This document shows positions 10,911 through 60,829 of a stretch of DNA of 64,000 bases, piece after piece; position 1 is the stretch's first letter, and each line of letters opens with the position of its first letter. A program made the translations under genes and the position numbers. Source of the DNA: Isurus oxyrinchus (lineage: Eukaryota). A model generated the notes under the pieces. The model saw only the letters and a program-made list of their open reading frames with translations. It searched no databases and was not told where the DNA came from. The stretch lies in the NCBI GenBank assembly GCA_026770705.1, contig JANJGN010000052.1, forward strand, positions 1,178,001-1,242,000, given 5' to 3'.

Positions 10911-12980
10911 AGGTGAGGTGAGAGTGACTGCCTTTGACATCAAGGCTGCATTTGACCGAGTGTGGCCTCTAGGATCCTGGGCAAAATTGGAGTCAATGGG
11001 AATCAGGGGTGGTACGAAAGTATAATAATTTGCTTAATATTTTCCTGGTTTGTTGTAAACTAGGTTTATGGTTGTGAGTGTAGATGGGTCTGTCTGTGTG
11101 GTCTAATTACATCTGGAGTCAGGTAGACTGCAAGTTTGAGATTATCAAAAGAAGCTAGATGTAGAAATGTACTTGAAATGCTAATGAGAACACATGGAGG
11201 CTGTGTTAGCATGTAAGGTGTGAAGGGGTTGTTTAGATTTCAAAGGGATGTTGGTCTGTTTAGGACAAGCCCAATAAGCAAAGCTAAGGAGTTTTTTTTT
11301 AATTTTACCCAAACTTCATTGACAATATTGGCAACATGAAAGTTTATATTATGGGAAAGGTACAGTTCCAAAGAATTTACACATCAAAGAGAGAGAAACA
11401 TGTATAAAGGAGAATGAAAGGCTATGTTGGGGGCCATGTAAGATCTAACAGGAGTGTGTGAAACAGGCTTGAAGAAGCCTCCAGGCATTTGTGCATAAGT
11501 CTGTTATGTTCAGTAAATAAAGTTGGAGAAATCCATTTAGAATTCCAGTGTCAAGTGTGTGCTGTGTTAACTCGCTGGGTTTGTTTTTAATCTAAAATCT
11601 TATTTTGGATTGTTGCCTTAAACGGGCTCTGTAACTGGGAGTCAGGTTAATTAGGAATTTGAGAATTTATTTTAGCTGTAACTAACTGTGACATTATGTC
11701 TGTGCTTGAAATCTTTTATTTTGATAATAAATATCTTAATTGAATTTTTAAAATCTCTAAAGGTTGTGGTCAACTCATTACTCCTGAATTCAGTGCACGC
11801 TTCTTGTAATAAATACAAATTGCAAAACTATTGTGATAGCATGACCAATTTTCCCTTGTGGATTTGGAGCACCAAGCACACATCATCTGCCATGTCATGT
11901 CACAGGGAAAACTCTCCACGCGTTGGATTCATACCCAGCACAAAGGAAGGTGGTTGTGGTTGTTGGAGGTCAGTCATCTCAGTTCCAGGACATCACTGCA
12001 GGAGTTGCTCAGTGTAGTGTCCTAGGCCCAACCATCTTCAGCTGCTTCATCAATGACATTCATTCTATCAGATGGTCAGAATTATGGATGGTCGCTGATG
12101 ATTGCACAACGTTCAACATCATTCATGACTCATCAGATGCTGAAGCAGTCCATGTCCAAATGCAGCAAGACCTGGACAATATCCAGGCTTGGCCTGACAA
12201 GTGGCAAGTAACATTCATGCCACACAAGTGCCAGGCAATGACCATCTCCAAACAGAGAGAATATATCCATCTCCCCTTAATGTCTAATGGCATCACCATT
12301 GCTGAATCCCACACTATCAACACTCTGGGGGTTACCAATGACAAGAAACTGAACTGGACTAGCCATATAAACACTGTGACTATAAGAGCAGGCCAGAGCC
12401 TGGGAATCCTGTGGTAGTAACTCACCTCCTGACTCCCCAAAACCTGTCCACCAACATCAAGGCACAGGTCAGAAGTGATGGAATACTCTCCACTTTCCTA
12501 GATGTGTCCAGCTCCAACAACACTCAAGAAGCTCGACACCGTCCAGGACAAAGCAGCCCCGCTTGATTTGCGCCCCGTCCACAAACATTCTCTCCCTCTA
12601 CAACTGACGCACAGTGGCAGCAGTGTGTGTACCATCTACAAGATGCAACGCAGTGAGTCACCAAGCCTCCTTAGACAGCACCTTCCAAACACATGATCAC
12701 TACCATCTAGAAGGACAAAGGCAGCAGACACATGGGAACACCACCACCTGGAAGTTCCCCTCCAAGTCACTCACCATTCTGACTTGGAAATATATCACCA
12801 TTCCTTCACTGTCGCTGGGTCAGAATCCTGCAACTCCCTCCCAAACAGTTCTGTGGGTGTACATACACCACAGGGACTGCAGCAGCTCAAGAAGGCAGCT
12901 CACCCCCATATTCTCAAGGACAATTAGGGATGGGCAATAAATTCTGGCCTAGCCAGTGTCAGTGAATGAATACAAAAAAG
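10911..12980 (+). mobile_element. 5'-truncated CR1-clade LINE (RT to 3' tail) inserted in gene A 3' flank, interrupted by an LTR-like element
   Basis: Translates to GEVRVTAFDIKAAFDRVW, GVAQCSVLGPTIFSCFIND, VADD; tail gggatgggcaataaa...gaatgaatac. Confidence 0.9.
11010..11904. mobile_element. Solo-LTR-like insertion nested in the CR1 RT region
   Basis: LINE sequence ggaatcagggg|gggaaaactctcc is split by ~895 bp with TG...CA ends and internal AATAAA. TSD is ambiguous within a G run. Confidence 0.7.
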
Positions 12981-13389
12981 AAGCAATTAAAATGCCCTGA
13001 CATTTCTGTACATTTTTATCAAATTAAATACGTACTCTAGTGAATAATTCCATTCTCCAAGGCACCACTTCCTGTTGTCACATGCCCTTCTGATTATTTA
13101 AATTCCTGTGTCATTGGTAATGGAACATTCCCATGTAAACATGTCACACTGTAATTACAGCCTCCTGCCAGTGGTGGTGCTCTAGTGTCCTACCTTTGCT
13201 TCTCAGAGACTGGAGGAGCTGTATACTTTGTGTTTACAATATTAGTAACACTCAGGAGTGACCAGGGGGATTCTTTTGGCCAAGTTTACGATGTTGCTAA
13301 GATACAATGGCCCCCTGGGATTTTTCCTACTGCGTTTACAAGGTTGAATTGAAGAGATTTTTGAAGTGTCTGGCACAGTTTTATGAAGG

Positions 13390-13980
13390 TCCCCTCACAC
13401 CCAATCTGGAGTCACTGGGTTCAGTCCAGAACACCGCACCTCAGGGAAGATATATTGTCCTTGGAGGGGGTGCTGTGCAGAGTCACCAGAACGATCCCGG
13501 GGCTGAAAGGGTTAAATCCCGAGGACAGGTTGCACAGACCAGGCTTGTGTTCCCTCAAGTCTCAAAGATTAAGGGGTGATCTAATCGAGGGGTTTAAGAT
13601 GATTAAAGGATTCGGTGGGGTCGATAGAGAGAAACTATTTCCCCGGATGGTGGGGGTGAGGGTGGGGGTGGGGGTGGGGGTGTGGGGGTGGGGGTGGGGG
13701 TGGGGGTGAGGTGAGGAGGGGTCCAGAACAAGGGGGCAGAACATTAACATTGGAGCCAGGCCGTTCAGGGGGTGATGTCAGGAAGCACTTCTTCACACAA
13801 AGCGGGGGTGGAAATCTGGAACTCTCTCCCCCAGAAAAAGCTGTCGAGACTGGGAGGGGTCAATTGTAAATTTCAAAACTGAGATTGGGAGATTGTTGTT
13901 GGGTCGGGGGTTAAGGGTCACGGAACCGAGGCGGGTGGATGGGGTTAAGATACAGATCGGACGTCATCCAATCAAATGTT
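13390..13980 (+). mobile_element. CR1/L3 LINE 3' fragment (second family) with an internal (GGGGT)n tract
   Basis: Translates to SQRLRGDLIEGFKMIKG, typical of the CR1 ORF2 C-terminus. Confidence 0.8.
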
Positions 13981-14944
13981 AGGACGGTGAGTCTCAGGGA
14001 GGCTGGCCCAACCCCAGACGCAGCCGTCTCTGTGACCTGCTTCAACCCTGTTGGTCAGCAATGACAACATGAGTTGATGTTAGCCTGATATGTAGTGCAT
14101 GGAGGGATATTACTCTCCAGGGTGTGTGTGCATCACAGTGCTCATTCACATGTGTTCCATGTGCACCTACATCAGCTGTGTAGACATACAAGCCTCAATG
14201 CTGCATCTGGGGAATGTGCCATGTCTCACACCTTAGCTGCAGCACGACCCTTCCCTTGGAGCTCTGTGTGCTCGAGACATATTTTGTTATTTTTTCCTGC
14301 CGTCTCTGTGTCCCCCGACCCGGGAGTGAAAATCCGGCCTTAACTTCCACTTTCTAGTGTCTGAGACAAGAGGCAATGAGTGAGTGGGCTGACGGTCAGG
14401 ATTAATGCTGTTAATCTGTGTTTGAGGGGCTGTGAATTCTCGGGGGACTAGTTACTCTCTGAGCTGCAGCTTCCAATTCCTTATTTGATGCCGTGCATGT
14501 GGGGTTGGAAGATTATTTTTAAAACCACAGGCAGTTCACAGAAACCCACAGGAAACCCACAGAGAGACAGTCACCGGGAAACACACTCACTCCTTGTGGT
14601 TTCACCTTTTAACCACATCCTGTCTGTGTGGCTTAAATGTTAAACACACCGGCCACACTCAGGGAGGTTNNNNNNNNNNNNNNNNNNNNNNNNNNNNNNN
14701 NNNNNNNNNNNNNNNNNNNNNNNNNNNNNNNNNNNNNNNNNNNNNNNNNNNNNNNNNNNNNNNNNNNNNNNNNNNNNNNNNNNNNNNNNNNNNNNNNNNN
14801 NNNNNNNNNNNNNNNNNNNNNNNNNNNNNNNNNNNNNNNNNNNNNNNNNNNNNNNNNNNNNNNNCAGACAGACACACATACACACATACACACATACTTA
14901 CACACACACACTCACTCACACACAGGCAAACACACACACAAATA

Positions 14945-17115
14945 TCCTGACAGCAAACTGCGATTAAGAGCTTCCTACAACTTAACTAACAGACCAAAGA
15001 CATATTGAACTGTCTGAAAGTGACTTGTTTTTCAAAGAAATACAAGATTGTACACAGATCAAAAATGGCTGACACAAGTCATCTGATTGCTGATACTGTG
15101 AAGTTGATCACTTCTCTGGAAAGGTTCAAATGAATTGCAATGCAGACCTGTTGCATGGAAGTTCATGCCTGGTGTGTGTCAGGGTTCACTTCAAACAGGG
15201 ACACTCTTAAAAGGAAGGCATTAAAATGCAAAGTGCTGGACTTTGATCAGCTGTAGTTCTATCAAAACAGTAGGAACTGCTCACCAAGCGGATAATCATC
15301 AGCCATTCAAAACTCCCTGTGGAGGATACAATACCCCCATCTCCTGTTGATTTATATCTTGAAATGCATCAAATGTTTTGGAGATGCAAAGATAAAAAAT
15401 GGGAATACTTGGTCTATAACAATGAATGCAAAACATGCTGATTGAATTCCCTTCAGGAATATACAGACAGGAGTCAAACAAATGGTTCTGCCAAGCAGAT
15501 ATAAGAGAAAGGAGGAGGAAAAAGAAATATGACAGTCTTCCACAAACACTGCTGGAAAAGAGCAGAAATGACTTCTCCCTCCCTCTCGTTCTGTCCATCT
15601 CTGTCTCTCTCTCTGTCTCTCTCTGTCTCTCTCTGTCTGAAGCTAACAGACAGTCTTCAACAACGTGCAAGTCTGAGCCAGATGAAATACAGGAATCTGC
15701 TGAAAACCAACTAATTTAAAACAGCTTCAAACTTCACAGCCTAAGCTGCAGTACAAGCAAATGACTCTTAATTTTTTATTGGACTCTATAATTATTTTAC
15801 CTCTGATATCTGTGTGTATGTTTATGTGTGTGTCTGTGTGTGTGTGCCTGTGTGTCTGTTTGTGTGTGTGTGTGTGCCTGTCTGTGTGTGTGTGTGTTGT
15901 GTCTGTGTGAGCGTGTCTGTGTGTGTGCATTTGCCTGTGTGTGCGTGTCAGCCTGTCTGTGTGTGTGTCTGTGCACCTGTCTGTGTGAGTGTGTGTATGT
16001 GTGTGTAATTAAAAAATTAAAATGTGTCCCATTTTTATTATTTTTTCTCCAGTTAGGTAACTAATAAACTGACTCTTTCTTTGACTCAACCAAACATGGT
16101 TTAATTGGTTCATTCTTAACAACCAAAGACACTTGTTTTGCAAATTGCATTTGGGGGAAAATATATTTTAAACCCTTTCTTTCAACCAACCATAATTACC
16201 TGTTAAACCTCTTAACCTCATTACTACTGAATTCAAAGCCCACATCTCAAAACATACAAGTTGGAAATTAGTTGTGACAGTTGTTTCAAGTTTCCCTCCA
16301 GGATTTGAACAGCTCAGCATTTACCATCTGTTATGTCATAACAGAGCTTCCTTCAACTTAACCAACGAGCCAAAAATGTATTGAACTGTTTAAAGGAGAC
16401 CTGTTTTTTAAAAGTACAAGATTAGGCTCTGATCAAAAATGGCTGTCACGAGTCACCTGATTGCTGATACTGCAAACTTGATCACTTCTCTGGAAAGCTT
16501 CAAATGAATTGCACTACAGACATGTTGCATGAAAGTTCTCACTGAGGTGTGTCAGGGTCCACTTGAAACAGGGGTTCCCTTAAAAATGCAAAGCGCTGGA
16601 CTTTGATCACTGTAGGTCTATCAAGGTAATGGGAACTGCTCACCATGCAGATATTCATCAATCATTCAAAACCCCTTGTGGAGGATGAAATGCCTCCATC
16701 TCCTGTAGATTTATATCTTGAAAAGCATCAAATGTTTCAGAGATGCAAAGATCAAAAAAGGGATTACTTGGTCTGCAACTATGAATGCAAGACATGCTGA
16801 TCGAATTCCCTTTGGGAATATACAGACAGGAGTTTAACAACAGGTTCTGTCAAGCAGATATAAGAGAAAGTAGGAGGAAAAAGAAAGATGGCAGTCACTC
16901 AAAAACACTGCTGGAAAAAAGCAGAAATTCTCCCTCTCTCTCTCTTTCTGAAGCTAACAGAGCATCTTCAACAAAGTGCAAATCTGAATCAAATCACCAC
17001 CAGGATGACACAGGAAACCAATTAACTTTGAACAGATGCAAACGTCAACAATGTATTTCTCAAAGACAAGCAAAGGTATTAATCATATATTCTTTTACAT
17101 TGTTATTGGACTCTA
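14945..17115. mobile_element. Two tandem diverged copies of an ~0.8-kb LTR-like interspersed repeat (about 14945-15790 and 16344-17115)
   Basis: Shared blocks e.g. gatcaaaaatggctg, gcagatataagagaaag. Segment 16215-16343 resembles the 3' end of the 11010-11904 element. Copies recur at 53715-54570 and 56600-57390. Confidence 0.5.
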
Positions 17116-17599: not shown

Positions 17600-18425
17600 T
17601 CTGACAGTGCAGCATTCCCTCAGTGCCCACCCTCTGACAGTGCAGCACTGCCTCATCACTGACCGTCTGACAGTGCAGCACTCTCTCAGTGCTCACCCTC
17701 TGACAGTGCAGCACTCCCGCATCACTGACCCTCTGACAGTGCAGCATTCCCTCAGTGCTCACCCTCCGACAGTGCAGCACTCCCTCATCACTGATCCTCT
17801 GACAATGCAGCATTCCCTCAGTACTGACCCTCTGACAGTGCAGCACTCCCTCAGTGCTCACCCTCTGACAGTGCAGCACTCCCTTAGCACTGACCGTCTG
17901 ACAGTGCAGCAATTCCTCAATGCTCACCCTCCAATAGTGCAGCACTCCCTCAGTACCGACCCTCTGGGAGTGCAGCACTCCCTCAGTACTGACCCTCTGG
18001 GAGTGCAGCAATCCCTCAGTGCTGACCCTCCGACAGTGCAGCACTCCCTCAGTACTGACCCTCTGACAGTGCAGCACTCCCTCAGTGCTCACCCTCTGAC
18101 AGTGCAGCACTCCCTCAGTGCTCACCCTCTGACAGTGCAGCACTCCCTCAGTGCTCACCCTCTGACAGTACAGCACTCCCTTAGCACTGACCGTCTGACA
18201 GTGCAGCAATTCCTCAACACTCACCCTCCATAAGTGCAGCACTCCCTCAGCACTGACCCTTTGACAGTGTGGCACTCCCTCAGTACTGACCCTCTGGGAG
18301 TGCAGCACTCCCTCAGTACCGACCCTCTGGGAGTGAAGCACTCCCTCAGTACTGACCCTCCGACAGTGAGCACTCCCTCAGTACTGATCTTCCAACAGTG
18401 CAGCACTCCCTCAGCACTCCCTCAC
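17600..18425 (-). repeat. 33-bp minisatellite array, reverse orientation
   Basis: (GACAGTGCAGCACTCCCTCAGTACTGACCCTCT)n. Confidence 0.95.
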
Positions 18426-19337: not shown

Positions 19338-20762
19338 TATCAGTGTGTGGCAGAGAATGAACGTGGAGCGTTGGAGGGATTTATATCCATCTCTGTAGAA
19401 CGTGAGTTACACAGAATTGAACATTCTCTTGTTGTTAGCTCATGGGATGTGGGCATTGTTGACAAGGCCAGAAATTATTGCCCATCTGTAACTGCCCCTT
19501 GAGAAGGTGGTGGTGAGCTGCCTTCTTTAACCACTACATTCCCTGTGGTGTAGGTACACCCACAGTGCTGTTAGGGAGGGAGTTCCAGGATTTTGTCCCA
19601 GTGACGGTGAAGGAACGGCCGATGTGGTTCCAAGTCCCAGGGCAGACCACCACCTCAAGTTCACCTCCAAGTCACACACCATACTGACTTGGAACTGTCT
19701 TGGTGGAAGAGGTTAAGATTTTGGAAGGTACTGTCGAAGGAGCATTGGTGTGTTGCTGCAGCGCATCTTGTAGATGGTGCACACTGCTGCCATTGTGTGC
19801 CAGTGGTGGAGGGTATGAATGTTTATGCTGGTGGATGGGCTGTCGATCAAACAAGCTGCTCCTGGATGGTGTTGAGGTTCTTGAGTGTTGTTGGAGCTGC
19901 ACTTATTCAGGCAATTGGAGATTATTCCATCACACTCCTGACTTGTGCCTTGTTGATGGTGGACAGGCTTTGGAGAGTCAGGAGGTGAGTTACTCACCGC
20001 AGAGTTCCCAGCCTCTGACCCGCTCTTGTAGCCACATTATTTCCTGTTGCCAGGTGATTGCCAGGGCCAATAGCCTTTGCTGTATCCAGTATCATCAGCT
20101 GATTCCTGATGTCACGTGGAGTCAATCGAATTGTCTGAAAGCTGACATCTGTGATGCTGGGACCCTCTGGAGGAGGCCGAGATGGAGCATCCACTCAGCA
20201 CTTCTGGCTGAACATGGTTGCCAATGCTTCAGCCTTGTCGTTTGCACTGATGTGCTGAGCTCCCCCATCATTAAGGATGGGGATATTTGTGGAACATCCT
20301 CCTCCTGTTAGATCTTTAACTGTCCATCACCATTCATGACTGGATGTGGCAGGACTGCAGAGCTTAGATCTGACCCGTTAGTTGTGGGATCGTTTTGCTC
20401 TGTCTATAGCATGTTGTTTCCGCTGTTTGGTGTGTATGTAGTCCTGTGTGTCACCTCAGCAGCTTGGCACCTCTGTTATATGTGAATCCTCCTTATAGAA
20501 ACCTGCATGTACATGGATATTATCAATAAATATTACATAGATAAATGTTATTTGTATAGACCTTTCATGCATAGACAATATCACTTCACAAGTTCAGAAT
20601 TACTACATGTACATAGGGAACCATTCTCAAACTGTACCGGAGTCATTCATTGGCTGATTTTACAGGGCGAGATTCCAATGAATGGAAAGCAGGATTGCTT
20701 GGAGCTGGAATCTGTTTGAGTGTTGGACTGAGTGGATTCTTCATCTTCAAGTGTGTGAGAAA
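19338..20762 (+). pseudogene. Relic B: broken Ig exon (19338-19401) plus diverged TM exon (20666-20762)
   Basis: YQCVAENERGALEGFISISVE|gtgagt; ttttacag|RDSNEWKAGLLGAGICLSVGLSGFFIFKCVRK|gtaagt (97 nt, same phases as gene A TM); no upstream or cytoplasmic exons found. Confidence 0.8.
19440..20475 (-). mobile_element. Rearranged CR1 LINE fragments
   Basis: Reverse-complement match to the 11905-12980 and 31930-33890 LINE sequences. Confidence 0.85.
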
Positions 20763-21069
20763 GTAAGTGTGAAGGTTTAATTGGTTGTTTTCGAAAATGT
20801 TTTCTTCAACCTTCTCTCCTTATAGAAAGAACTTGCATTTCTATAGCACCTTTTACAATCCAAAACCCTTCACAGCCCCTGAAGAGCTTTGATGTTCAAT
20901 CAGTATTTTACATCTCATCCTACACTCCCTGTTTGACAACTCAGTCCTGTAACAGGCAGTGTTGACCCGGACCATAAGATACCTTGTGACCTACTGAGGA
21001 TGTGAAAGGTGCTATATAAATGAAAACCTTTCTTTTGTTAGTGAATGCAATCTCTTTCCTTTTTCCATG

Positions 21070-21330: not shown

Positions 21331-21589
21331 CGTCCTCTTACACAATGTTCAGTATCTCACATTTTTAAGGAGCGCTGAGCAACATCTGCTCCTTCAGAAG
21401 ATCCACCTCAACACCTGGAGTGAGCAGTGAATTGCAACTCGCTCACCAACTGCTCAGCTTTACACAGGAATCACGTCACAGAGTCAGGACACAAAGGGTT
21501 AACAGTTTGTTTACAACACAACACTAAGGCCCTACGTTTCAGTGAAAGGGTTTTCACAATTGTTCCCCAATTCCTGATTTTACTCACAG

Positions 21590-21740
21590 TGACACATCAA
21601 CCCTTTCTCATTAAATACACAGAGGGAGCAGCACAGGAAGAGGTCATTCAGCCCAAGCAGAGCGTGTGGGCAGTTCCTCCCCAGGCGAGCAGTCGGACAG
21701 GTCCTGGGTAAGTAAGGGAACGATTGGAATTCACTTCCAT
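21590..21740 (+). promoter_or_regulatory. Putative promoter and non-coding exon 1, copy 1 (donor at 21708)
   Basis: Block conserved in three copies, each ~0.4 kb upstream of a leader exon; ends CCTGG|gtaagt; contains ETS/PU.1-like GGAA cores. Confidence 0.55.
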
Positions 21741-22150
21741 GACCAACACCATCCTTTGTTGATGTTGTGACTTTATAAAGACAGATTCCAATAACTGATG
21801 CCTTTGAAAGATTTCTACTGATTATTGAGATCTGGGTGTGAGGCTCAAGTCTGTTGTACAGAACATTTTTCTAGCTCAAGGGATGAGGGAAGAGCAGGGA
21901 CATGAGCTTTGGGGTGTCCTGAGCAGGTGAAAGGCGATATAGAAATGCAAGTCCTTCATTGTTTTACTTTCTTAAAGCCTTGTAACTCTCTGCAGAGCAC
22001 ATATCATCCCACAGAGAATGAAATTAGTCTGTGAAGACATTGTCTAAAAACAGTTCTGATCTCTCGAGAGGTGTCGGACAAGAGGTGAGGTCTCGTTAAC
22101 TCATTTCTCTTTCACAGCTTGAGAACCAATGAAATACCTGGGAGTGGACA

Positions 22151-22190
22151 ATGATCAGGAAATCTTACTTCCTCCTGTCACTTCTCCAAG
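22151..22190 (+). CDS. Signal-peptide exon, copy 1 (MIRKSYFLLSLLQ; exon 22118-22190)
   Basis: tttcacag acceptor, acaATG, CAAG|gtaata phase-1 donor. Confidence 0.7.
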
Positions 22191-22976
22191 GTAATATCAT
22201 TGTCAGCTCGGACAGATTTATGGCTAATAGTCTTTGTAAAACATAATTCTTATTGAGCTGTGATTGGGAACAGATTCAGCAGTGAGCCAGTGTACAATCT
22301 CACACCAAGTCCCATTCACCCATCACCCCTGTGCTCACTGATATACACTGACTCCCTGTCTGACAGCAGAATTGGAGGATAGCAGAGGACTTTGAGGTTT
22401 GCATGGTTGGAGGAGAAAGTGATTGGAGAAGAGGAATGGAGGGAATGGAAATTGAGGATGAGAGTCTTAAACTCGAGGCTCTGCTGGACTGGGAGCCAGT
22501 GCAGGTCAGCGAGTGGCAGAGGGTGTGAGGTGTTGAGTTGAGAAACAGTGATAAATACTGGGGGATGAAGTCTATCCTGATGCTTGGACGCCGATAGCAA
22601 AGGAATGAAATTTGTGTCTTTTGCTGATTTTAGTCAGAATTTCCCATGAAGACAACACAGCAGCTCCTAGAATAGACAGGCTGTTCAGTGTCACACTTCC
22701 TGTCCATTCTCACCTTGCTAGATACTTCAATAAGGGAGCAAGATAACTGAAAGAGAGAAGGAAGGTAAAACTGTCTGTGTGTAAAGGTGTCAATATTCAG
22801 TCTGTATATTTGTCTTTCTCTCGACACATGCAGAGCTCAGGCTAGAGGCGCTTTGTTAGTGTGTTTCACAGTGTCTGCTGGAGTAGGGTCAGTGCTGAGC
22901 TTGGGGACAAGTCAGTCTACAATGCTGCATCGGAATCAACAATACAACAATATGGGGTTTGGATCAGAAATAATCC

Positions 22977-23100: not shown

Positions 23101-23709
23101 CATACAAAGTGCACCAATGATAGTGAATCAGATTAGCCAATCAGCTGTGTTGAAGAGCAGACAGGAATGTTAGGCTAATTAGTGATTCATGACTGTGATA
23201 ATGGGGGGAGTTCTGACGGCTCCTAATCCATTGTCCTGTCTTGTAAATCAGCAACTTAATACTGACCCTCCAACAGTGCAGCACTCCCTCAGTACTGATC
23301 CTCCAACATTGCAGCACTCCCTGATTAATGTCCCTCTGACAGTGCAGCACTCCCTCAGTACTGACCCTGAAACAGTGGAGATCTCCCTCAGTACTGACCT
23401 TACAATAGTGCAACACTCGCTCAGTAATGACCATCCGACAGTGCAGCACTTGCTCAGTACTGACACTGGGGAGTTTCAGTCTACTCTGTGGGGCAGACGT
23501 CCCCTGAATCGGGTCTTGAATCCCACAACATTCTGACCCCCTGAATTTGGCTGTGAAACCCACTGACCCACAGGAGAAACTCCTGGTCAATGACTGTCCA
23601 CCTGTGAGCAGAAATATCACCACAGGGTCAGGACACAAAGTTCACCAACATCTCAAAACATGAGCTGCTCTGTCACTTTGATCCAACTTCCTCATTTTGT
23701 CTCACAGAG

Positions 23710-23860
23710 ACACATCAACCCTTTCTCACTAAATACACAGAGGGGGCAGCACAGGAAGAGGTCATTCAGCCCAAGCAGAGCGTGTGGGCAGTTCCTCCCC
23801 AGGCGAGCAGTCGGACAGGTCCTGGGTAAGTAACGGAACGATTGGAATTCACTTCCACGA
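23710..23860 (+). promoter_or_regulatory. Putative promoter and non-coding exon 1, copy 2 (donor at 23826)
   Basis: Near-identical to 21590-21740 and 60830-60980. Confidence 0.55.
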
Positions 23861-24275
23861 CCAACACCGTCCTTTGTTGATGTTGTGACTTTATAAAGAC
23901 AGATTCCAATGATTGATGCCTTTGAAAGATTTCTACTGGTTATTGACATCTGGATGTGAGTCTCAGGTCTGTTGTACAGAACATCTTTCTAGCTCAAGGG
24001 ATGAGGGAAGTGCAGAGACATGAGCTTTGGGGCATCCTGAGGAGGTGAAAGGTGCTATAGAAATGCAAATCCTTCATTGATTTTCTTTCTTAAAGCCTTG
24101 TAACTCTCTGCAGAGCACCTATCATCCCACAGAGAATCAAATTCTTCTGTGAAGATATTGTCTAAAAGCTGTTCTGATCTCTTGAAAGCTGTCGGACAAT
24201 AGGTGAAGTCTCATTAACTCCTTTCTATTTCACAGCTTGAGAGTGAGAAGTGGATGGACTATCTGGGAGTGGACA

Positions 24276-27200
24276 ATGATCGGGAAATCTTACTTCCTCC
24301 TGTCACTTCTCCAAGGTAATATCATCGTCAGTATGGACAGATTTATGTTTAACAGTTTTTGTAAAAGATCATTCTTATCTCTTTATCTCTGTAACGTCCT
24401 GCAACTCAACCAAACAGCTTCCCAGATCTCTGTGTTACTCCAATTCCGGCCTCTTGACCATCCCCCGATTCCCATCACTCCAATAGTGGCGGCCGTGCCT
24501 TCAGCTGCCTGGGGCCTGAGCTCTGGAATTCACTCCCTAAACCTCGGCGATGGAGGAGATCAGAGGGTTTCATTTTACTGAGAATCACCACGACCACATC
24601 ACAGCTGCAGTCAGAATAGACAGAGAGTCCAGCCCTCACACTTCCTGCACAGTTTCACCATAGCAACCACAATAAGGAAGTAAAATAACTGAAAGTTAAA
24701 CCGAAGCCAAACCAGTCGGTGTAGAGAGATGAGATGTTTACACAGTTTCCCTGTGTATCTTGTAGACACTGTGTTGGGTGGAAGACTGGCTTCAGTAAAC
24801 AGAGTCCTGAGGACCATGAGCCAATGTAGAATGAACTTGTCCACTCCTGTGTCCAGGATTCTCTTCCATCCATTGTGAAACCTTGGGGAGTTCCTTGTGT
24901 GTCCTGTAGATGGTCCACACAGCAGCCACTGTGCCCCAGTGATGGAGGGGGTGGATATCGAGTCTAGTGGATTGACAAACCATCCAGAGTTAAATATTGA
25001 TATTTATATTACCCTGTAACCCGGCTTCACGGTTCTGGTAAGTGCTGCGTTATAATTACTCAACAATTCACATCCAACACTCAATGGGAAATAACACTTA
25101 CTGTGACGTTTACATATTAACACAAAACACAGCTTATTATAACACACTGTCTGATTCTCAATAACCTGGTGATCGCTTCCAGTTCAGTCCTAAAGCAACC
25201 TCTAATACTCACTTTAATATCAATGATGAAAAGCATTAACTGTATTATCAGGTTATCCATTCCCATCAATCTCTCCTGTCCTGTTTAAAAGTCTGACGTA
25301 TCGATAAAAGAAAGATGTGCATTTCTGCAGCGCAATTTACCACCTCAGGAGGATCCAAATCCCTTCACAGCCAATGAAATTATTCCTGAATTGTAGTCAC
25401 AGATGTTAAACACAGCAGGCAGTTTGTGCACAGCAAGATCCAACAAACCACAATGTAATAAATCACCCAGATCACTGAGGAAATGAGAAGCCAGTGAACT
25501 CAAACCTCTGGTCTGATGAAGAGTCATACGGACTCGAAACGTTAACCCTGTCTTCCTCTCCACTGATACTGTCAGACCTGCTGAGTCTTTCCAGCAATTT
25601 TTGTTTTGGTTTCAGATTTCCAGCATCCGCAGTATTCTGCTTTTAACTCCAATCTCTGGTCTGAGCCTCTTCTCTCATCCAGTGTTCTCAATTCACATGT
25701 CTCGGAGTGAACGTGTATTAAGCTGAGAGACAGAAACACTACTGCCAAAGAGCAAGAAAATCTTTCCTGATCATTGTAACCTCTCAGTTCTGATATCATC
25801 CTTGTAAAAGTGCTTTCTCTTGTGGGACTGTGATTTCTATTTGAACTGATGCTTCACGTTATATTTCTCTAAAAGGATCCATTCTCTGTCTGTTAGATTT
25901 CACAGATAAACCCATGATATTCCCTGCGGAAATTATTGCAGGAAAGCCTGTGGATGTAAGCTGCACCTTCAACACAACGTGCAATGGAACAGCAGCACCT
26001 GTCTTAACCTGGGACACTCCCACTGACGTCCCTGGATCAGTCTCATACACTGTAACTCAGCATGGTGTCACTCTGACCTATACTTGTGTTGTGACCCTGA
26101 TTCCATCACTCAAACACCACGGACACACTCTCAGCTGCAGAGTGAGATATCCATCTGTTTCATCGGAGCGGACCCTCGTACTAACTGTGCAAGGTAATTA
26201 CATACACTTTCATTCTACATCAGCACTCCCTCAGCGCTGACCCTCTGACAGTGCAGCCCATTCTCAGTATCCACATTCTAAGGCCTCTCTAAGTGCTTCA
26301 AAGTCGATAGAAGTTAATTGATCTTTATTTGATTATTGCTGAATGAAGAGACAAGCTGTCTAAACTTTATATCTCGCACACACCATTCTCCATGGCAACA
26401 CCTCCACCTATCAGAGACCACTTGCCAACCAATCAGCACTCTCTTCCCATTAAGTATAAATTGTTGTTCACTTTCTGTTGGTAATCCTGTGAACGGGCTT
26501 CTTGATTCCTGCCCTGACATCTTAATGTCCCAATGAACAGAACAACTTCCAACAATGAGCTGTGGTTAGTGATTCCTCACATTACATCCAGGGACACTGG
26601 AGACTATCAGTGTGTGGCAGAGAATGAACATGGAGCAGTGGAGGGATTCATAACCATCACTGTGGAACGTGAGTGTACACAGACTTCAACATCTCTCGCA
26701 GATTCGAACACGACACAAACACCCTCAAACATACACATCTAAGTAGACACATGCAGACACACATATATGACCACACAGAAAGACACACTCACACACAAAC
26801 ACACTAACACACACTCCCCTGTGGGCTACCTGACCTCCCTCAGTACTGCCCTGGAGAGTTGGCCTGAATTCTGGGATTTGTGTTCCCATTCATATTTATG
26901 CAAGAATATGGAAATTACAAAGTCTATTACAGACAGTCAGATGCATAGAGACACTCACAGATACTCTCTGCCTCTCCAACTCTCTCTCTCCCTTTAAGAA
27001 GCTTCCTGAAAGCTCACCCTTCGAACAATCACCGGTCCCAAATCCTCCTTATCTGATTTGTGTGATTTTCTTTGTGTATTTGAGAGTAAGCGAGAGGTGG
27101 AGAGGTTTAGGAGGAGAATTCCTGTTGGTGAAAAGCTTACATCATGTTCTCACCTTTCCAGTGCCCATATTTTACATGATGTCCAATGTCCTTGTTCATA

Positions 27201-29275
27201 ATGGGAATTGCCTATGTAAACATCACGCTGTAGTTACAGTCTCCTACCAGTGGTGGCATTGTAGCACTTAATCCTTGTGTTTCCCAGCTTTTCAAGCAAC
27301 TCCACTTCCCAGTTTGCTCCACAAGCTGTGAGTTCATTGGAATTCAATTATTTCTCAAACGGTAGATTTGATGTCATTTTATTGAAAACTTCCTCAGTGC
27401 CTCCCTGAAGGGTTGACACTCTCTGGGAAGCAGGAATAGGCTGGATGTTGGGGAGTTCATCTTTTCCCAAAGAGTAGTGATCCTCGGGAATGTGCTGTCA
27501 GTGGGTGTGGTGGTTGCTGATTCTCTGTCGCCTTCAAGAGGGATCTGGAGTGGTTACTGACTGGGGGAGAGATCATGGAAACGGAGAATGATACAGCACA
27601 GGAGGAGGCCATTCAGTCCATTGTGCCTGTGCCAGGTCTTTCAATGTTCTATCCAATCAGATCCACTAACCACCATTCCAATTTGCCACCATCTTCCTCC
27701 TTTAAGTATTTATCCAATTTCCCTTTTGAAAGTTCCTATTGAATCTGCTTCCACCGCCCTTTCAGGCAGCACCTTCCAGATCACAACAACTCGCTCTGTC
27801 AAAACAAATTCTCCTCATCTCCCCCTTCGGTTCGTCAATCTGTGTCCCTCTGGTTACCGAGCCTCCTGCCCCTTAAGTACATTGATACTGTTCACCTCAA
27901 CCACTCCCTGTGGGAGCGAGTTCCACATTCTCCCCTCTCTCTGGGTAAAGATTGGAACTGTTTATTAAGTGAGGCCTGTAAGTCCGTGGTGGAGTCCATC
28001 TCGATCCTGCCCGATTCGTACACGCGTCCGAGATGGATTTCCACCCTGCACTAAACGTTTCCAGAATTTTCTACAGCACAATCCTGTACACAACGATTGG
28101 GAGAAACATTGGACAGGGAGTCCAACAGCACAATGATCCATTCTCACCAATGTTCCACGCTAAGGGGAAAGTTCCGATTGTCCACTCTTAGAGTGTTTAC
28201 AATGAAAACATTCATTCCACATTGAATCCCAGTGGATGGGTCAATATTACAGCAAATGTTGCAGTGATATGAAGCTTGATTGTTCAGCCAGAGTGAGAGA
28301 TTGAAAGCGGAGAGTCAGTGATGATTTCTTTCTGTGTGTTCTCTAGACAGTGGAGGAGAGATTCTGCACGTGATCCTGATCCTGGGAATACGAGCTGTGA
28401 TATTCCTTGTGGCTGTGGTTATCACTATCGCTGGAGTCTGTGTCTGGGAGAGACAAACAGTGAAAGCAAGTCGACAGACTGTTTGAAGCTTTGTACAGCA
28501 ACAATCTGGTCAGTCAGTGCGGACAAATAACGTGTGATGTTGGGTTAAGTTGTAATGAAACTGGTCAGTGTCCTGGTTAGAATCACCTTCGTATCAGAGA
28601 GGCATTCCAGCACAGTGGGAGCCCATTCAGCCCATTGAGTCCATGCTGTCTCTCTGTAGAGCAATCCACTCAGTCCCATTTCCCCCGCTCTATCCCCGTA
28701 TCCCTGCAAGTTTATTTCCCCTCAAGTGTCCAACCAATTTCCTTTTGAAATCATTCGTCTCCGCTTCCACCATCCTCGTAGGCAGCGAGTTCCAGCTCAT
28801 TACCACTCGCTGTGTAAAAAAGTTACTCCTCACATCCCCCCTCTGCCCAAAACCTTCAATCTGTGTCCCCCAGTCCTTGTCCCATCAGCTAATGGCAACA
28901 GCTTCTCTTTGTCTGCCTTATCTAAACCCATCATCATCTTGTACACCTCGATCAGATCCCCCCTCAATCTCCTTTGCTCCAAGGAGAACAACCCCAGCTT
29001 CTCCAACCCAACCTTGTAGCTAAAATCCCTAATCCCTGGACCCATTCTGCTCAATCTCCTCCCCACCCTCTCAAGGACCCTCACTTCCTTCCCAAAGTGA
29101 GGAGACCAGAACTGGACACAATACTCTAGTTGTCACCTAAACAGAGCTTTATAAATGTTCAGCATAACCTCCCTGTGTTTGTACTCAATCCCTCGATTTA
29201 TGAAAAGCTTATTCTTTCCATCAGCACAAACAGCAATTTCCAAGCAGACTCCCATCAGCAGACAGAGTGCAATGA
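24276..29275 (+). CDS. Gene C: activating-type Siglec-like receptor lacking its V-set domain (possibly a pseudogene); leader 24276-24315, C2 25897-26193, TM from 28347, probable last exon from 29225
   Basis: Leader MIGKSYFLLSLLQ, C2 exon and TM exon are all phase-1 compatible and open. V exon and Ig-repeat exon are deleted at their 5' ends. 3' UTR is homologous to gene A, with AATAAA near 29562. Confidence 0.6.
25007..25037 (+). pseudogene. Remnant of the gene C V-set exon (last 31 nt plus donor)
   Basis: Flanks match both sides of the intact V exon at 63545-63913; acceptor and ~340 nt of exon are missing. Confidence 0.9.
25510..25645 (+). mobile_element. Short interspersed repeat with a hammerhead-ribozyme-like core (Penelope-like element terminus)
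   Basis: CTGATGA-A-GAGTC-atacg-GACTC-GAAA-CGTTA; related partial copies near 30430-30525 (+) and 38890-38975 (-). Confidence 0.55.
25897..26193 (+). CDS. Gene C Siglec domain-2 C2-set exon
   Basis: tgttag|AT TTC ACA GAT AAA CCC...CAA G|gtaatt, 297 nt; VSC-x5-C-x4-P-x-LTW...HHGHTLSCRVRYP...ERTLVLTVQ matches the Siglec second-domain pattern. Confidence 0.88.
26516..26668 (+). pseudogene. 5'-truncated Ig repeat exon in gene C
   Basis: HLNVPMNRTTSNNELWLVIPHITSRDTGDYQC...TVE|gtgagt; nearly identical to gene A repeats; no acceptor or first Cys. Confidence 0.9.
28347..28486 (+). CDS. Gene C transmembrane exon with intramembrane Arg (SGGEILHVILILGIRAVIFLVAVVITIAGVCVWERQTVK)
   Basis: tgtgttctctag|AC AGT GGA... 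phase 1. Ends at a possible GC donor (AAA|gcaagt, 28465) or reads through to TGA 28484-28486. This frame is not in the ORF track. Confidence 0.8.
28590..29200 (-). mobile_element. CR1/L3 LINE 3' fragment
   Basis: LGLFSLEQRRLRGDLIEVYKMM...TRTGGHRLK on the minus strand. Confidence 0.85.
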
Positions 29276-29570
29276 AACATCGGCATGCCTGCTTCTTAAT
29301 GTACGGAGAGAAACCTGGAACGAGAGATTCTCCTTCTTCTCCTCAGCAAGCTGAAACTTTTCCTTATACCTGGTGCTCCCCAGTCCTGCTGTGTGGACAC
29401 ATCATAACCACGGCATTGTCTGGCTGTGTGCAGCCAACATGGTCGAATAGGAATGAACAGAAATGTGACATTGCTAAACTCTGTTCTCTGATTGGAATGT
29501 GCTTTCTGAATGCTGCACCTTTTTCATGCTGCAATAGATTGTAAGAAGCATTTGGGTTATGAATAAAATT
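29225..29570 (+). other. Probable gene C terminal exon (HKQQFPSRLPSADRVQ* if phase 0) and 3' UTR
   Basis: attctttccatcag acceptor; 29425-29570 aligns with gene A 3' UTR 10748-10900; AATAAA near 29562. Confidence 0.5.
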
Positions 29571-29909
29571 ACATTGATTAACACAAGTGATTAAAATGCT
29601 CAGGCTGTTCTGTAGATATTTAAAGATTAAAATTCTTGTTTTGCTGCAAAATACTTGGCTCAAAGACATTACTTCATATTGTCATGTTTTCCAATCAGAT
29701 GAATTCCTCTGTCCATCTTTATAATAGAAATTTCCAATGTAAACATGTCACATTGTAGCTGCACACACTTGCCAGTGGCTGGTGTGATATCAAAGCTGTC
29801 TTGCTGTCGAGAAACAGCGAGAAATATTCCTGTTGTGTGCATGAACTTCATGTTAGCATGAGACACAGGCATCAGATACAATTTTGTGCAATTTGTACAA
29901 TGTTCTTTA

Positions 29910-30430
29910 GACAGCGGAGCACTCCCTCAGTACTGACCCTCCAACAGTGCTGCACTCCCTCAGTTCAGACCCTCCTACAGTGCAGCACTCCCTCAGATCA
30001 GACCCTCCGACAATGCAGCACTCCCTCAGTTCAAACCCTCCGACAGTGCAGCACTCCCTCAGTTCAGACCCTCCGACTTTGCAGCACTCCCTCAGTTCAA
30101 ACCCTCAGACAGTGCAGCACTCCCTCAGTTCAGAACCTCCGACAGTGCAGCACTCTCTCAGTTCAGACCCTCCGACAGTGCAGCCCTCCCTCATTTCAGA
30201 CCCTCCGACAGTGCAGCACTCCCTCAGTTCAGGCCTCCGACAGTGCAGCACTCCTTCAGTTCAGACCCTCCGACAGTGCAGCACTCCCTCAGTTCAAACC
30301 CTCCGACAGTGCAGCTCTCCCTCTGTTCAGAGCCTCCGACAGTGCAGCACTCCCTCAGTTCAGACCCTCCGACAGTGCAGCACTCCCTCAGTACTGAACC
30401 TCCGACAGTGCCGCACTACCTCAGTACTTC
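29910..30430 (-). repeat. 33-bp minisatellite, variant unit (…CTCAGTTCAGACCCTCC…)
   Basis: Tandem gacagtgcagcactccctcagttcagaccctcc. Confidence 0.92.
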
Positions 30431-54582: not shown

Positions 54583-54624
<42 letters not shown>

Positions 54625-55289
54625 CTTCCTGTGTGAGCGTGTGTGTGTGTCTGTGCCTGTCTGTGTGTGGGTGTCAGTGTGGTGTGTGTCTGTGCTTGTC
54701 TGTGTTTGTGTGCGTTTGTGTGTGTATGCGTGTGCACCTGTGTGTCTGTGTGTGTGGGCCTGCGTGTGAGTGTGTGTATGTGTGCCTGTGTGTCTGTGTG
54801 TGTGGGCCTGTGTGTGAGCGTGTGTATGTGTGCCTGTGTGTGAGCGTGTGTATGTGTGCCTGTGTGTGAGCGTGTGTATGTGTGCCTGTGTGTGAGCGTG
54901 TGTATGTGTGTCTGTGTGTGAGCGAGTGTATGTGTGCCTGTGTGTGAGCGTGTGTCTGTGTGCCTGTGTGTGAGCGTGTGTATGACTTGTTGTGGAAATT
55001 GCATTTGGGGGAAACTATATTTTAAACCCTTTTTGCAACCAACCATGGGGGTTGAATAGAAAGGGAGCCAGTTCACTGCCCGTCACCCAGTTGTAACAAC
55101 ATTCACACACACACACACTCTCACACACACACTCTCACACACACACATTCACACACACCCACATCCACTTACCCACACACAAACACACACAAACAAAGAT
55201 AATGTCCCACTGACAGGAAACTGCGACTGAGTGACAGCATGTCAGGAATATATAATAATCTCCATAATGTTATTGGAATTTATTGTAAA

Positions 55290-56180
55290 ATAGAGTCCAT
55301 GTGTCTGTGTCCACATGTGTCTGTGATGTGTTTGTGTGAGACTTATTAGAATTAGAGGAAGCTGGTCTGGGTGTTTTGATGTGAGAAGAGAAGTTAGGTT
55401 TGAACTGTTTATTAGATAAACATGGGGAAGTTTTAGAATGTGAAGTGTAAAGGGGGCAATTTGCATTTTAAGTTAAACCAAACGAGATTGTTTTCAAAGA
55501 AGGAGAGAAATGTGTCACCGAGCCAGGTGAAGATAAGAAACAGTGTGTTTATTTTTGCCAAAGATTACTGGTAAAACTTAGGGCTATGAGAAATTTGTAT
55601 TATTACAAAGATAAAGTCCAAAGACATAGTGAAACAATGGGAATTTGCATTCAAAGGGGAAAATATGTATCAAGGAGTGAAGACTGTGTGTAAGGGTCGG
55701 TGTTTTTAAGATCTTACAATGATGAAAAGCCTTCAGCCTGCATGTACCAAGCTGCTGCCTCCAGGGACTGAAGTTAAGAGAATTCACTTTGAACTCAACT
55801 GTTCAGCGTATCGTTTACTGTTCCTGGGACATTTAAAATCTCTGTGTTTTACTGTTGCCTTAACAGAGATAACAGAGCGTCTTCAACAAAATGCAAATCT
55901 GAATCAAATAACCACCAGGATGCCACAGGTAACCAATTAACTTTGAACAGCTGCAAACTTCAGCAATCTACGCCTCAAAGACAAGCAAAGGTATTAATCA
56001 TATATTCTTTCAAATTTTTGTCGGACTCTAACTTTTTAATTCTGACGTGTGTAAATGGAAGTTAAATTAATTAAGGGATTTAGAAGTTATTATAGTAGTA
56101 ATTTATAGACAGATGTGTATGCTTAAAAATCATTTTTTCTTGTTAATCAATGTTTAATCTAGTTTTATAAAATCCTCTTA
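55290..56180. mobile_element. LTR-like element related to 11010-11904, interrupted by a foreign ~190-bp patch
   Basis: Shared blocks (gaatttgcattcaaag, aagccttcag, cttaaaaatc...ttaat); absent from the first duplicated block. Confidence 0.5.
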
Positions 56181-60730: not shown

Positions 60731-60829
60731 CATTCTTGACACCAAAGGATTTACCAGTTTGCTTACAGTGGAAGACAAAGAGTTGGTTTCTCAAATTCAC
60801 ACAAACCAACTCACATTTTGACTCACAGA

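What the first reader, a model, noticed from the sequence alone, without database searches (positions are those of the whole stretch)
28347..28486. Hidden activating-type TM exon with intramembrane arginine and tyrosine-free tail
Read in phase 1 from the acceptor at 28346, the exon gives ILHVILILGIRAVIFLVAVVITIAGVCVW; the ORF track shows only a different frame. An Arg in the outer half of the helix is the hallmark of ITAM-adaptor-coupled receptors (LILRA/PIR-A, FcalphaRI, GPVI, OSCAR, NKp46, Siglec-14). The tail is short and lacks Tyr whether it reads through (ERQTVKASRQTV*) or splices from AAA|gcaagt to 29225 (HKQQFPSRLPSADRVQ*).
Basis: partly seen in the sequence, partly recalled or inferred. 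Interest (0 to 1): 0.8.

Follow-up and report, generated by a model that had tools for sequence, protein, structure and literature searches.

The report
Shark activating-type Siglec membrane exon, V-less copy
This is a real, spliced and conserved shark exon that gives Siglec-like immune receptors a membrane anchor with a buried arginine and a 12-residue tail, the usual build of an activating receptor. It is already in public automatic annotation, and this gene copy has lost its sugar-binding domain.

Summary
Window 28349-28486 reads SGGE-ILHVILILGIRAVIFLVAVVITIAGVCVW-ERQTVKASRQTV* behind a good acceptor.

It is not a chance ORF. A 45-residue search of 1.84 billion proteins gave 9 shark receptors that all keep the Arg (best E 5e-13). 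Among 102 proteins fetched, 24 carry ILGIRA, and 23 of those have it at the C-terminus with 4-12-residue tails without Tyr.

Transcript contigs of 4 of 4 runs show the predicted GT..AG joint 26193>28347. The acceptor 29225 is used, but from a donor at 28508, after the stop. The tail is therefore the read-through one.

This copy is damaged. Its V-set exon and half of an Ig exon are deleted, so at best it encodes leader-C2-TM. The contigs cannot be assigned to this copy rather than to paralogues.

The same exon closes Siglec-like, CD22-like and CEACAM/SLAM-like shark receptors. The adaptor could not be tested.

The scan found this exon type before, at five other places in this genome. It is a new member of a known kind, of modest interest.

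The parts
24276..24315 (+). Leader exon, coding part. ATG at 24276, reads MIGKSYFLLSLLQ, then one base G (phase 1), with donor GT at 24316.
   Evidence: Read. It is identical to the N-termini of P0012 and P0091. P0101 residues 1-24 map to 24243-24314. An X1 loose end at 24315 runs on into a paralogue's V exon.
25007..25037 (+). 31-nt remnant of the 3' end of the V-set exon, with its donor. The rest of the exon and its acceptor are deleted.
   Evidence: 24759-25005 matches 63288-63534 (95%) and 25007-25124 matches 63883-64000 (93%), so 348 nt covering the acceptor and most of the V exon 63545-63913 are missing.
25897..26193 (+). C2-set Ig exon, phase 1 at both ends, open frame.
   Evidence: Pfam C2-set_2, E 2.7e-6. 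88-93% identical to Carcharodon proteins by tblastn. GT..AG joints at both ends in 4 of 4 runs.
26516..26668 (+). 3' half of an Ig (I-set type) exon. The 5' half and the acceptor are missing, and transcripts skip it.
   Evidence: Only 26516 onward matches the tandem Ig exons. P0035 residues 280-329 map to 26518-26667. An X2 loose end before 26516 carries the missing upstream part from a paralogue. The joint 26193>28347 skips this remnant.
28347..28508 (+). TM and tail exon, phase 1. The hydrophobic segment is 28361-28447, the Arg codon 28391-28393, the tail ERQTVKASRQTV, and the stop 28484-28486. The last 22 nt are 3'UTR.
   Evidence: sequence and frame; joints at both ends, and X5 record 23 spans 28345-28508 exactly. 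E 5e-13; 93.5% identical to Carcharodon proteins.
28509..29224 (+). Intron in the 3'UTR (GT..AG).
   Evidence: Joint 28507>29224 (cut +1) in X2. X6 shows 28492>29220 with 12 letters between. X5 record 24 begins 25 letters before 29220. Splice sites read.
29225..29585 (+). Terminal 3'UTR exon, with AATAAA at 29562. Its 3' part is homologous to the 3'UTR of the ITIM-bearing last exon of the inhibitory genes.
   Evidence: Contigs of X2, X5 and X6 lie on 29220-29469. Poly(A)-signal scan. 29422-29587 matches 10744-10912 (78.7%) and 49733-49900. The end coordinate is inferred from the poly(A) signal and was not observed.

Best explanation
Window 28347-28508 is a genuine terminal-coding exon of a shark Siglec-like gene cluster.

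What it encodes. It encodes a short stalk, one membrane helix with a single arginine about a third of the way in from the outside, and a 12-residue cytoplasmic tail. The tail has no tyrosine or other signalling motif.

How it probably works (inferred, not shown). By analogy with activating immunoreceptors, the buried Arg would pair with a membrane aspartate of a separate ITAM-bearing adaptor chain. That adaptor would both allow surface expression and carry the signal. The neighbouring genes, with an uncharged helix and an ITIM/ITSM tail, would be the inhibitory partners.

What is shown. The exon is spliced directly to the C2-set exon, and the exon with its Arg is conserved in three shark orders.

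This copy. It sits in a damaged gene. The sialic-acid-binding V-set exon and half of a downstream Ig exon are deleted. If transcribed, the gene can only give an in-frame leader-C2-TM(Arg) product that cannot bind sialic acid in the usual way. I take this copy to be a decaying or ligand-blind member of the family. I put the odds that it is itself expressed at about even.
For: Sequence, frame and splice sites.

Splicing. GT..AG joints 25037>25897 and 26193>28347 appear in 4 of 4 runs (3 samples, 3 studies, 2 organism labels). The 3'UTR joint 28508>29225 appears in X2.

Conservation. phmmer of the 45-residue exon peptide against 1.84e9 proteins gave 10 hits at E<=1e-3. Nine are shark Ig receptors that all carry ILGIRA in their C-terminal part (at the very end in 8; mid-protein in the fused model P0009), and one is a low-complexity repeat. 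Of 102 proteins fetched, 24 hold the motif. In 23 of those it is followed by a tail of 4-12 residues with no Tyr. The exception, P0009, is a fused gene model. P0015 of Carcharodon has the same 29-residue helix as the window. Annotated proteins show the same C2>TM junction ...VQDSGGE....

Family. The full-length relative P0092 matches CD33 (E 4e-26), MAG and Siglec-5/8/10 among solved structures.

Inhibitory partners in the window. There is an uncharged TM exon at 8124-8240 and 47335-47451. The tail exon 10446-10715 reads ...ILYANI...TEYTQI....

Damage to this copy. V exon deletion. Half Ig exon.
Against: No adaptor was identified or could be searched for, so coupling is inference.

All runs are short Logan contigs labelled 'RNA?' by guess. 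They were laid at 90% likeness, and only 21-30 letters lie on the shorter side of each joint.

Every contig on the C2 exon, in all four runs, differs from the window at 25948, 26086, 26091 and 26102. Three of these changes are non-synonymous, and two of them (26086 and 26091) restore residues shared by all the relatives compared. The 25948 residue (Pro) also occurs in P0101. The spliced contigs may therefore come from paralogues or other alleles, not from this copy.

The left side of the 25037>25897 joint is no longer than the V-exon remnant, so an intact-V paralogue explains it equally well.

No protein with exactly this copy's exons was among the 102 fetched.

A leader of 13 residues joined straight to the C2 domain may be a poor signal peptide. 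However, Carcharodon P0101 is annotated with just that junction.
Confidence: 0.78

Rival explanations
1. This copy is alive. It is transcribed and makes a V-less leader-C2-TM(Arg) protein with a role of its own, for example a ligand-blind partner that competes for the adaptor, or a receptor that uses the C2 domain.
For: All three coding exons are open and all splice sites are canonical. Skipping the deleted V exon keeps the frame. Carcharodon has annotated V-less relatives with the same leader>C2 junction (P0101, P0017). Intron contigs about 99% identical to the window exist in X1 and X2, for example 28046-28355 with 3 differences in 310. No difference inside the TM exon was among the 40 best-supported rows, though 275 rows were not shown.
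Against: No contig carries this copy's own C2 variants in any of the 4 runs. A joint 24315>25897 was not among the 15 listed. The TM exon peptide is identical in 9 of the 12 Carcharodon proteins that carry it, so TM-exon reads cannot be assigned to one copy. The deletions of the V exon and of half the Ig exon look like decay.
Confidence: 0.3
2. The buried Arg does not dock an ITAM adaptor. It serves something else, such as retention or degradation of unassembled chains, pairing with another membrane partner, or lipid contact.
For: No adaptor is shown. A 2014 survey reported no FcR-gamma chain in the shark genomes then available (PMC4016189, passages read).
Against: The full build is the standard one for adaptor-coupled receptors: one basic residue in the helix, a tail of 4-12 residues without Tyr, and inhibitory twins with ITIM/ITSM next door. 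The nine residues around the Arg are invariant across three ectodomain families, which fits one shared docking partner. That invariance is partly by selection, because the 24 proteins were picked by the motif. The 2014 survey predates the chromosome-level shark genomes, and its passages do not report on DAP12 or CD3-zeta in sharks.
Confidence: 0.1
3. The exon is used mainly as an alternative 3' end of the long upstream gene with the tandem Ig-exon array, giving a long activating isoform, and does not close the short gene that starts at 24276.
For: In other sharks the same exon follows Ig (I-set) exons in long proteins (P0002, P0003).
Against: The joints listed enter 28347 from the C2 exon at 26193. 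Two other TM-type exons (8124-8240, 20665-20763) and a tail exon lie between the array and this exon. I laid no reads upstream of 23650, so a long-range joint was not looked for.
Confidence: 0.07
4. It is a chance open frame and not an exon.
For: Short hydrophobic ORFs do occur by chance in microsatellite-rich DNA.
Against: E 5e-13 against 1.84e9 proteins. 93.5% identity to annotated Carcharodon protein ends. Exact GT..AG joints in 4 of 4 runs.
Confidence: 0.01

Closest known systems
Annotated shark proteins ending in the same exon, e.g. Carcharodon carcharias XP_041037067.1 (P0092, 'Siglec 7'), XP_041037232.1 (P0091), XP_041037190.1 (P0015, 'CD33-like'); Scyliorhinus torazame XP_072325011.1 (P0001); S. 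canicula P0012/P0013
   Same: The C2>TM junction, the Arg position and the helix are the same (29 of 29 residues with P0015; 93.5% over 46 residues with P0014/P0016/P0090-95/P0098). The 12-residue Tyr-free tail ends in RQTV.
   Different: Those proteins keep a V-set domain with the YFFRIEF arginine motif, which this copy has deleted. No fetched protein is identical to the window's exons. The S. canicula models end five residues after the helix.
Mammalian activating Siglecs that pair with DAP12 (Siglec-14, -15, -16, -H). This is recalled from general knowledge and comes from no call.
   Same: Siglec-type ectodomain (CD33 is the best solved match of P0092), one basic residue in the helix, a short tail without motifs, and inhibitory twins nearby.
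   Different: No sequence similarity of the helix to them was tested or found. The adaptor in sharks is unknown. Here one and the same exon also serves non-Siglec receptors.
[quoted passage not shown]
   Same: Paired activating and inhibitory Ig receptors exist in this clade, so the principle is in print.
   Different: MDIRs are CD300/TREM/pIgR-like, not Siglec-like. Their sequences were not compared here.
This is recalled.
   Same: An Arg in the outer part of the helix and a short tail.
   Different: As I recall, in those the Arg lies within the first few helix residues. Here it is the 11th of 29, which is closer to the depth usual for DAP12 partners. FcR-gamma was reported not found in sharks in 2014. 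Nothing here decides between adaptors.

Membership tests
Siglec (sialic acid-binding Ig-like lectin) | N-terminal V-set domain with the essential arginine on strand F | tested here: not met
   The V exon of this copy is deleted apart from 31 nt. The next gene (63545-63913) and relatives such as P0092 keep it with YFFRIEF.
Siglec (sialic acid-binding Ig-like lectin) | C2-set domain of Siglec type after the V domain | tested here: met
   Pfam C2-set_2, E 2.7e-6 on 25914-26195. The exon is 88-93% identical to shark 'Siglec' models, and their V+C2 part matches CD33 at E 4e-26.
Siglec (sialic acid-binding Ig-like lectin) | Binds sialic acid | not testable with these tools
   This needs glycan binding assays. 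It is not expected for this copy, which has no V domain.
Adaptor-coupled activating immunoreceptor | A single basic residue inside the membrane helix | tested here: met
   Arg at 28391-93 is the only charged residue in the 29-residue hydrophobic stretch. It is kept in 9 of 9 unselected relatives.
Adaptor-coupled activating immunoreceptor | Short cytoplasmic tail without ITIM, ITSM, ITAM or any Tyr | tested here: met
   The tail is 12 residues with no Tyr. 23 of 24 relatives have tails of 4-12 residues with no Tyr.
Adaptor-coupled activating immunoreceptor | Physical, charge-dependent association with an ITAM adaptor (DAP12, FcR-gamma, CD3-zeta) | not testable with these tools
No adaptor gene lies in the window. 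The one paper passage found reports no FcR-gamma in sharks.
Adaptor-coupled activating immunoreceptor | Inhibitory counterpart with a related ectodomain close by | tested here: met
   Genes with an uncharged TM exon (8124-8240, 47335-47451) and an ITIM/ITSM tail exon (10446-10715, 49435-49704) lie in the same window. Inhibitory relatives P0101 and P0017 share the C2 exon at about 90%.
Shark 'ILGIRA' membrane cassette (unnamed; a set of annotated shark proteins) | Helix with ILGIRAxIF...CV, placed at the C-terminus and entered in phase 1 | tested here: met
   The window matches every column that is invariant in the 24 proteins. The residue before S[GR]GE is D, Y or N in 18 of 20 cases, which fits a split codon ending in AC as in the window (inference).

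The most novel reading that the evidence does not exclude
The ILGIRA exon is a family-hopping signalling cassette. One phase-1 exon of about 46 codons has been grafted onto at least three unrelated Ig ectodomain types in sharks: Siglec-like, CD22-like and CEACAM/SLAM-like. It has stayed almost invariant across three shark orders because it docks one dedicated adaptor chain that nobody has yet identified. On this reading, V-less copies such as this one are expressed as ligand-blind competitors for that adaptor.
Probability: 0.25. Interest if true: 0.55.

Novelty: new member of a known kind. Interest (0 to 1): 0.28.

Why it matters
It shows that cartilaginous fish have the 'activating twin' build of Siglec-type receptors: a buried Arg, almost no tail, and inhibitory ITIM twins next door. 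The activating module is one conserved exon shared by several receptor families.

That makes the shark adaptor a concrete, testable target. A 2014 survey did not find FcR-gamma in sharks.

For this particular locus the value is mainly annotation. The exon is real, its tail is the read-through one, there is a 3'UTR intron, and the gene has lost its ligand-binding exon.

The proteins are already in RefSeq-type automatic annotation, and the scan has reported the same exon type elsewhere in this genome. The gain from this report is therefore small.

Tried and rejected
1. Paralogous TM exons inside the window. None was found: blastn and tblastn of the exon against the window gave only the self hit. 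Conservation therefore had to come from other species.

I could not compare introns or splice sites, measure dN/dS, or check whether the CD22-like and SLAM-like models are true genes or fused predictions. Protein-level agreement between species and pipelines is the only support: P0004, P0005 and P0011 come from two genera, and P0007 and P0010 from two genera.

3. Word-index search with only the 45-residue end of P0001. It gave 3 proteins from 5 candidates, which is too insensitive. The wider C2+TM region of P0012 gave 79.

4. Rays and skates. Among the 79 hits only one ray protein has an Arg in its helix (P0063, Hypanus sabinus). The phmmer search found no ray, skate or chimaera at E<=1e-3. 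I therefore do not claim conservation beyond sharks.

5. It was rejected. GCA AGT there codes for Ala-Ser of the conserved ...K(G/A)SRQTV end, and the observed donor is at 28508.

6. Species. No fetched protein matches any exon at 100%. The best matches are Carcharodon carcharias and Cetorhinus maximus at 88-97%. I call the source a lamniform-like shark and name no species.

7. Adaptor. No query sequence was available, and the notebook search for DAP12/ITAM adaptor notes gave only receptors with built-in ITAMs.

8. Literature. Searches found no paper on shark Siglecs with a charged helix or on shark DAP12. The library lacks most subscription journals. Supplements were closed; Supplementary file 9 of PMC8455134 lists Ig gene families including Siglecs and may bear on this.

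9. Look-up of earlier notes by sequence was blank.

Full report
THE OBSERVATION

An acceptor AG at 28345-46 follows a pyrimidine tract. From 28349 the frame reads SGGEILHVILILGIRAVIFLVAVVITIAGVCVWERQTVKASRQTV and stops at 28484-86. The single Arg (CGA, 28391-93) is the 11th of 29 hydrophobic residues.

With a 50-aa cut-off the mechanical ORF list shows this frame (28334..28486) next to the longer ORF in another frame (28318..28530). The exon is 'hidden' only at the default cut-off.

The segment is the most hydrophobic 23-residue window of all six frames apart from six C/V-rich low-complexity runs that I read as translated TG/CA-type microsatellite. It ranks 7th after overlaps are collapsed, out of 46,609 stop-free windows scored. 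It lies ahead of the two uncharged TM exons of the neighbouring genes. It has no second copy in the window.

THE SETTING

The window is a shark Siglec-type gene cluster with a large segmental duplication: 1-17,000 resembles 43,767-57,400. It holds:
- tandem arrays of near-identical Ig exons;
- uncharged TM exons at 8124-8240 and 47335-47451;
- ITIM/ITSM tail exons at 10446-10715 and 49435-49704, reading ...ILYANI...TEYTQI....

The gene that the finding belongs to has these parts:
- A leader exon with ATG at 24276, reading MIGKSYFLLSLLQ, ending in phase 1 at 24315. It is identical to the N-termini of P0012 and P0091.
- A V-set exon that is deleted. 24759-25005 and 25007-25124 match 63288-63534 and 63883-64000 of the next gene, so 348 nt covering the acceptor and all but 31 nt of the V exon are gone.
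- An intact C2-set exon at 25897-26193 (Pfam C2-set_2, E 2.7e-6).
- Only the 3' half of an Ig exon, from 26516.
- The TM exon of the finding.

The C2 exon ends in phase 1.

TRANSCRIPTS

The run search listed 21 runs, all kept as Logan contigs. Only one is on record as RNA, and the others are guesses. I laid X1 and X2 (organism A, one sample) and X5 and X6 (organism B) on 23650-29500 at 90% likeness.

Joints seen:
- 26191>28345 (cut +2, so 26193>28347; GT..AG; skips 2153 nt) in 4 of 4 runs, one contig each, with 21-30 letters on the shorter side. It skips the half Ig exon.
- 25036>25896 (cut +1; GT..AG) in 4 of 4 runs.
- 28507>29224 (cut +1; GT..AG) in X2. X6 has 28492>29220 with 12 letters between. 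X5 record 24 starts 25 letters before 29220. X5 record 23 covers exactly 28345-28508.

The exon therefore runs from 28347 to 28508. The stop at 28484-86 lies inside it, and an intron in the 3'UTR leads to a last exon from 29225, with AATAAA at 29562.

LIMITS OF THE TRANSCRIPT EVIDENCE

The contigs are short and the runs' RNA nature is a guess. The GT..AG joints speak for RNA.

Every contig on the C2 exon differs from the window at 25948, 26086, 26091 and 26102, in all four runs. Read by codon, these changes are Pro>Arg, Cys>Ser, Val>Leu and one silent change. The Ser and Leu states are those of all the relatives compared (P0001, P0012, P0091, P0092 and P0101). The Arg is shared by most of them, but P0101 carries the window's Pro.

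In X2 the C2 contig is less like the window (5 differences in 144) than intron contigs are (3 in 294; 0 in 151). The spliced contigs may therefore stem from paralogues.

The left side of the 25037>25897 joint is never longer than the 31-nt remnant. A paralogue with an intact V exon explains it as well.

In Carcharodon the TM-exon peptide is identical in 9 of the 12 proteins that carry it, so TM-exon reads cannot be assigned to one copy. No difference within the TM exon was among the 40 best-supported rows, but 275 rows were hidden.

I conclude that the exon type and this junction are used in mRNA. Expression of this very copy is open.

RELATIVES

I searched exon by exon and never joined exons into a model.

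The 45-residue peptide was scored against 1.84 billion representative proteins. There were 10 hits at E<=1e-3. One is a low-complexity repeat protein (P0008). The other nine are shark Ig-superfamily proteins from Scyliorhinus torazame, Chiloscyllium punctatum, C. plagiosum, Hemiscyllium ocellatum, Rhincodon typus and Mustelus asterias. All nine carry ILGIRA at the matching place. The best hit has E 5e-13 and 82% identity.

A second search used the C2+TM region of the S. canicula protein P0012. It covers proteins of 150-476 residues only and gave 79 hits at E<=1e-5. Cluster members were then added.

Of all 102 proteins held, 24 have the motif. They come from 8 species in three orders: Carcharhiniformes, Lamniformes and Orectolobiformes. 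In 23 of the 24 the helix is C-terminal, with a tail of 4-12 residues and no Tyr. The exception, P0009, runs on into the C2 exon of a next gene and is plainly a fused model.

The 24 were picked by the motif, so invariance of those six columns is circular. Outside the motif, positions +7 (I), +8 (F), +12 (V), +20 (C), +21 (V) and -5 (L) are also invariant.

The window's exons are closest to Carcharodon carcharias and Cetorhinus maximus proteins:
- TM exon: 93.5% identical;
- C2 exon: 88-93%;
- V exon of the next gene: 95%;
- Ig exon: 96.7%.

P0015 has the very same 29-residue helix as the window. No exon matches at 100%, so I name no species, and this copy's product is not among the proteins found.

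The conserved end ...K(G/A)SRQTV, with the same stop position in Carcharodon and S. torazame, shows that the read-through tail is the true one.

WHAT KIND OF RECEPTOR

The full-length relative P0092 (V, C2, TM with Arg) matches CD33 (E 4e-26), MAG, Siglec-5, -8, -10 and -7, sialoadhesin, Siglec-15 and CD22 among solved structures. It keeps YFFRIEF in its V domain.

The same TM exon also closes other architectures:
- CD22-like proteins with many Ig domains: P0004, P0005 and P0011;
- a one-domain protein: P0006;
- two proteins, P0007 and P0010, whose ectodomain matches CEA/CEACAM1, CD276, NCAM2 and CD2 but no Siglec at E<=0.01.

An earlier agent of this scan reported the same reuse. I reached it from my own search.

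The residue before S[GR]GE is D, Y or N in 18 of 20 proteins. That fits a split codon ending in AC, as in the window. This is inference.

MECHANISM

Shown:
- a spliced, conserved exon that encodes a helix with one Arg and a motif-free tail;
- inhibitory relatives with ITIM/ITSM tails in the same window.

Inferred from established knowledge of activating immunoreceptors (recalled): the Arg pairs with a membrane Asp of an ITAM adaptor, which is needed for surface expression and for signalling.

Which adaptor is used cannot be read from the sequence. As I recall, the depth of the Arg (11th of 29) is nearer to that of DAP12 partners than to the very N-terminal Arg of FcR-gamma partners. A 2014 survey reported no FcR-gamma in sharks (PMC4016189, passages read).

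THIS COPY

With the V exon gone, the only in-frame product is leader-C2-TM(Arg). Carcharodon has annotated V-less relatives with just that leader>C2 junction, although with inhibitory ends (P0101, P0017). Such products are therefore not absurd.

Even so, the two deletions and the lack of any contig with this copy's own C2 letters make decay the likelier reading.

The 3' part of the last exon (29422-29587) is 78.7% identical to the 3'UTR behind the ITIM exon of the inhibitory genes. This suggests that the activating gene type arose from an inhibitory one that gained the Arg exon with its own stop.

NOVELTY

The kind is well known in mammals (recalled). Activating/inhibitory Ig receptor families are in print for a skate (PMC3031540, passages read).

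For shark Siglecs with a charged helix I found no paper in searches.

The proteins themselves are in public automatic annotation. Notes of this scan describe the same exon type at five other places in this genome.

Verdict: a real feature, a new member of a known kind, of modest interest.

Noticed in passing
window 350-6830 and 44116-46810: Tandem arrays of near-identical Ig exons (…NLTWRHLNVPMNRT…GDYQCVAENEHGAVEG…) spaced about 1.0-1.3 kb apart. There are at least six copies in the first array and three in the second. An assembly gap (N run) interrupts the first array.
   Followed up: partly
window 1-17000 vs 43767-57400: Large segmental duplication (84-97% identity) that carries the Ig array, an uncharged TM exon (8124-8240 / 47335-47451) and an ITIM/ITSM tail exon (10446-10715 / 49435-49704). 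These look like two inhibitory Siglec-like genes flanking the activating-type copy.
   Followed up: partly
window 20562-20763 and 21617-21707 (also 60856-60946): A second type of uncharged TM exon (WKAGLLGAGI…FIFKCVRK type, matching P0033, P0035 and P0036 at 94-97%) and a cytoplasmic exon lie just upstream of the leader exon. A unit of about 700 bp that holds this cytoplasmic exon and a leader exon is repeated at 21567-22253, 23683-24378 and 60806-61482.
   Followed up: no
window 29422-29587 vs 10744-10912 and 49733-49900: The end of the activating gene's 3'UTR exon is 78.7% identical to the 3'UTR behind the ITIM exon of the inhibitory genes. The ITIM-coding part has no counterpart. This hints that the activating type derives from an inhibitory gene.
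   Followed up: partly
window 9230-10280, 17600-18418 (inverted), 29910-30428: Arrays of a satellite with a period of about 33 bp. They translate as open repeats (…QHSLSSDPPTV…) and give long spurious ORFs.
   Followed up: no
window 24243: Carcharodon P0101 starts 11 codons upstream of MIGKSYF. The matching codon in the window is GTG, so the start here is probably the ATG at 24276, as in the catshark models.
   Followed up: no
P0009 (Chiloscyllium plagiosum XP_043539248.1): This public model reads from the Arg helix straight into the C2 exon of a following gene. It looks like a fused prediction that skips the stop.
   Followed up: partly
P0063 (Hypanus sabinus, 292 aa): This is the only ray protein among the 79 C2-region hits with an Arg in its helix (…SLAVRGVLF…). 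It has a tail of about 8 residues that holds one Tyr. Homology of its helix to the shark cassette is not established.
   Followed up: partly
window 28509-29224: The intron lies wholly in the 3'UTR, about 22 nt behind the stop. That is close enough not to mark the mRNA for nonsense-mediated decay by the usual 50-55 nt rule (recalled).
   Followed up: no
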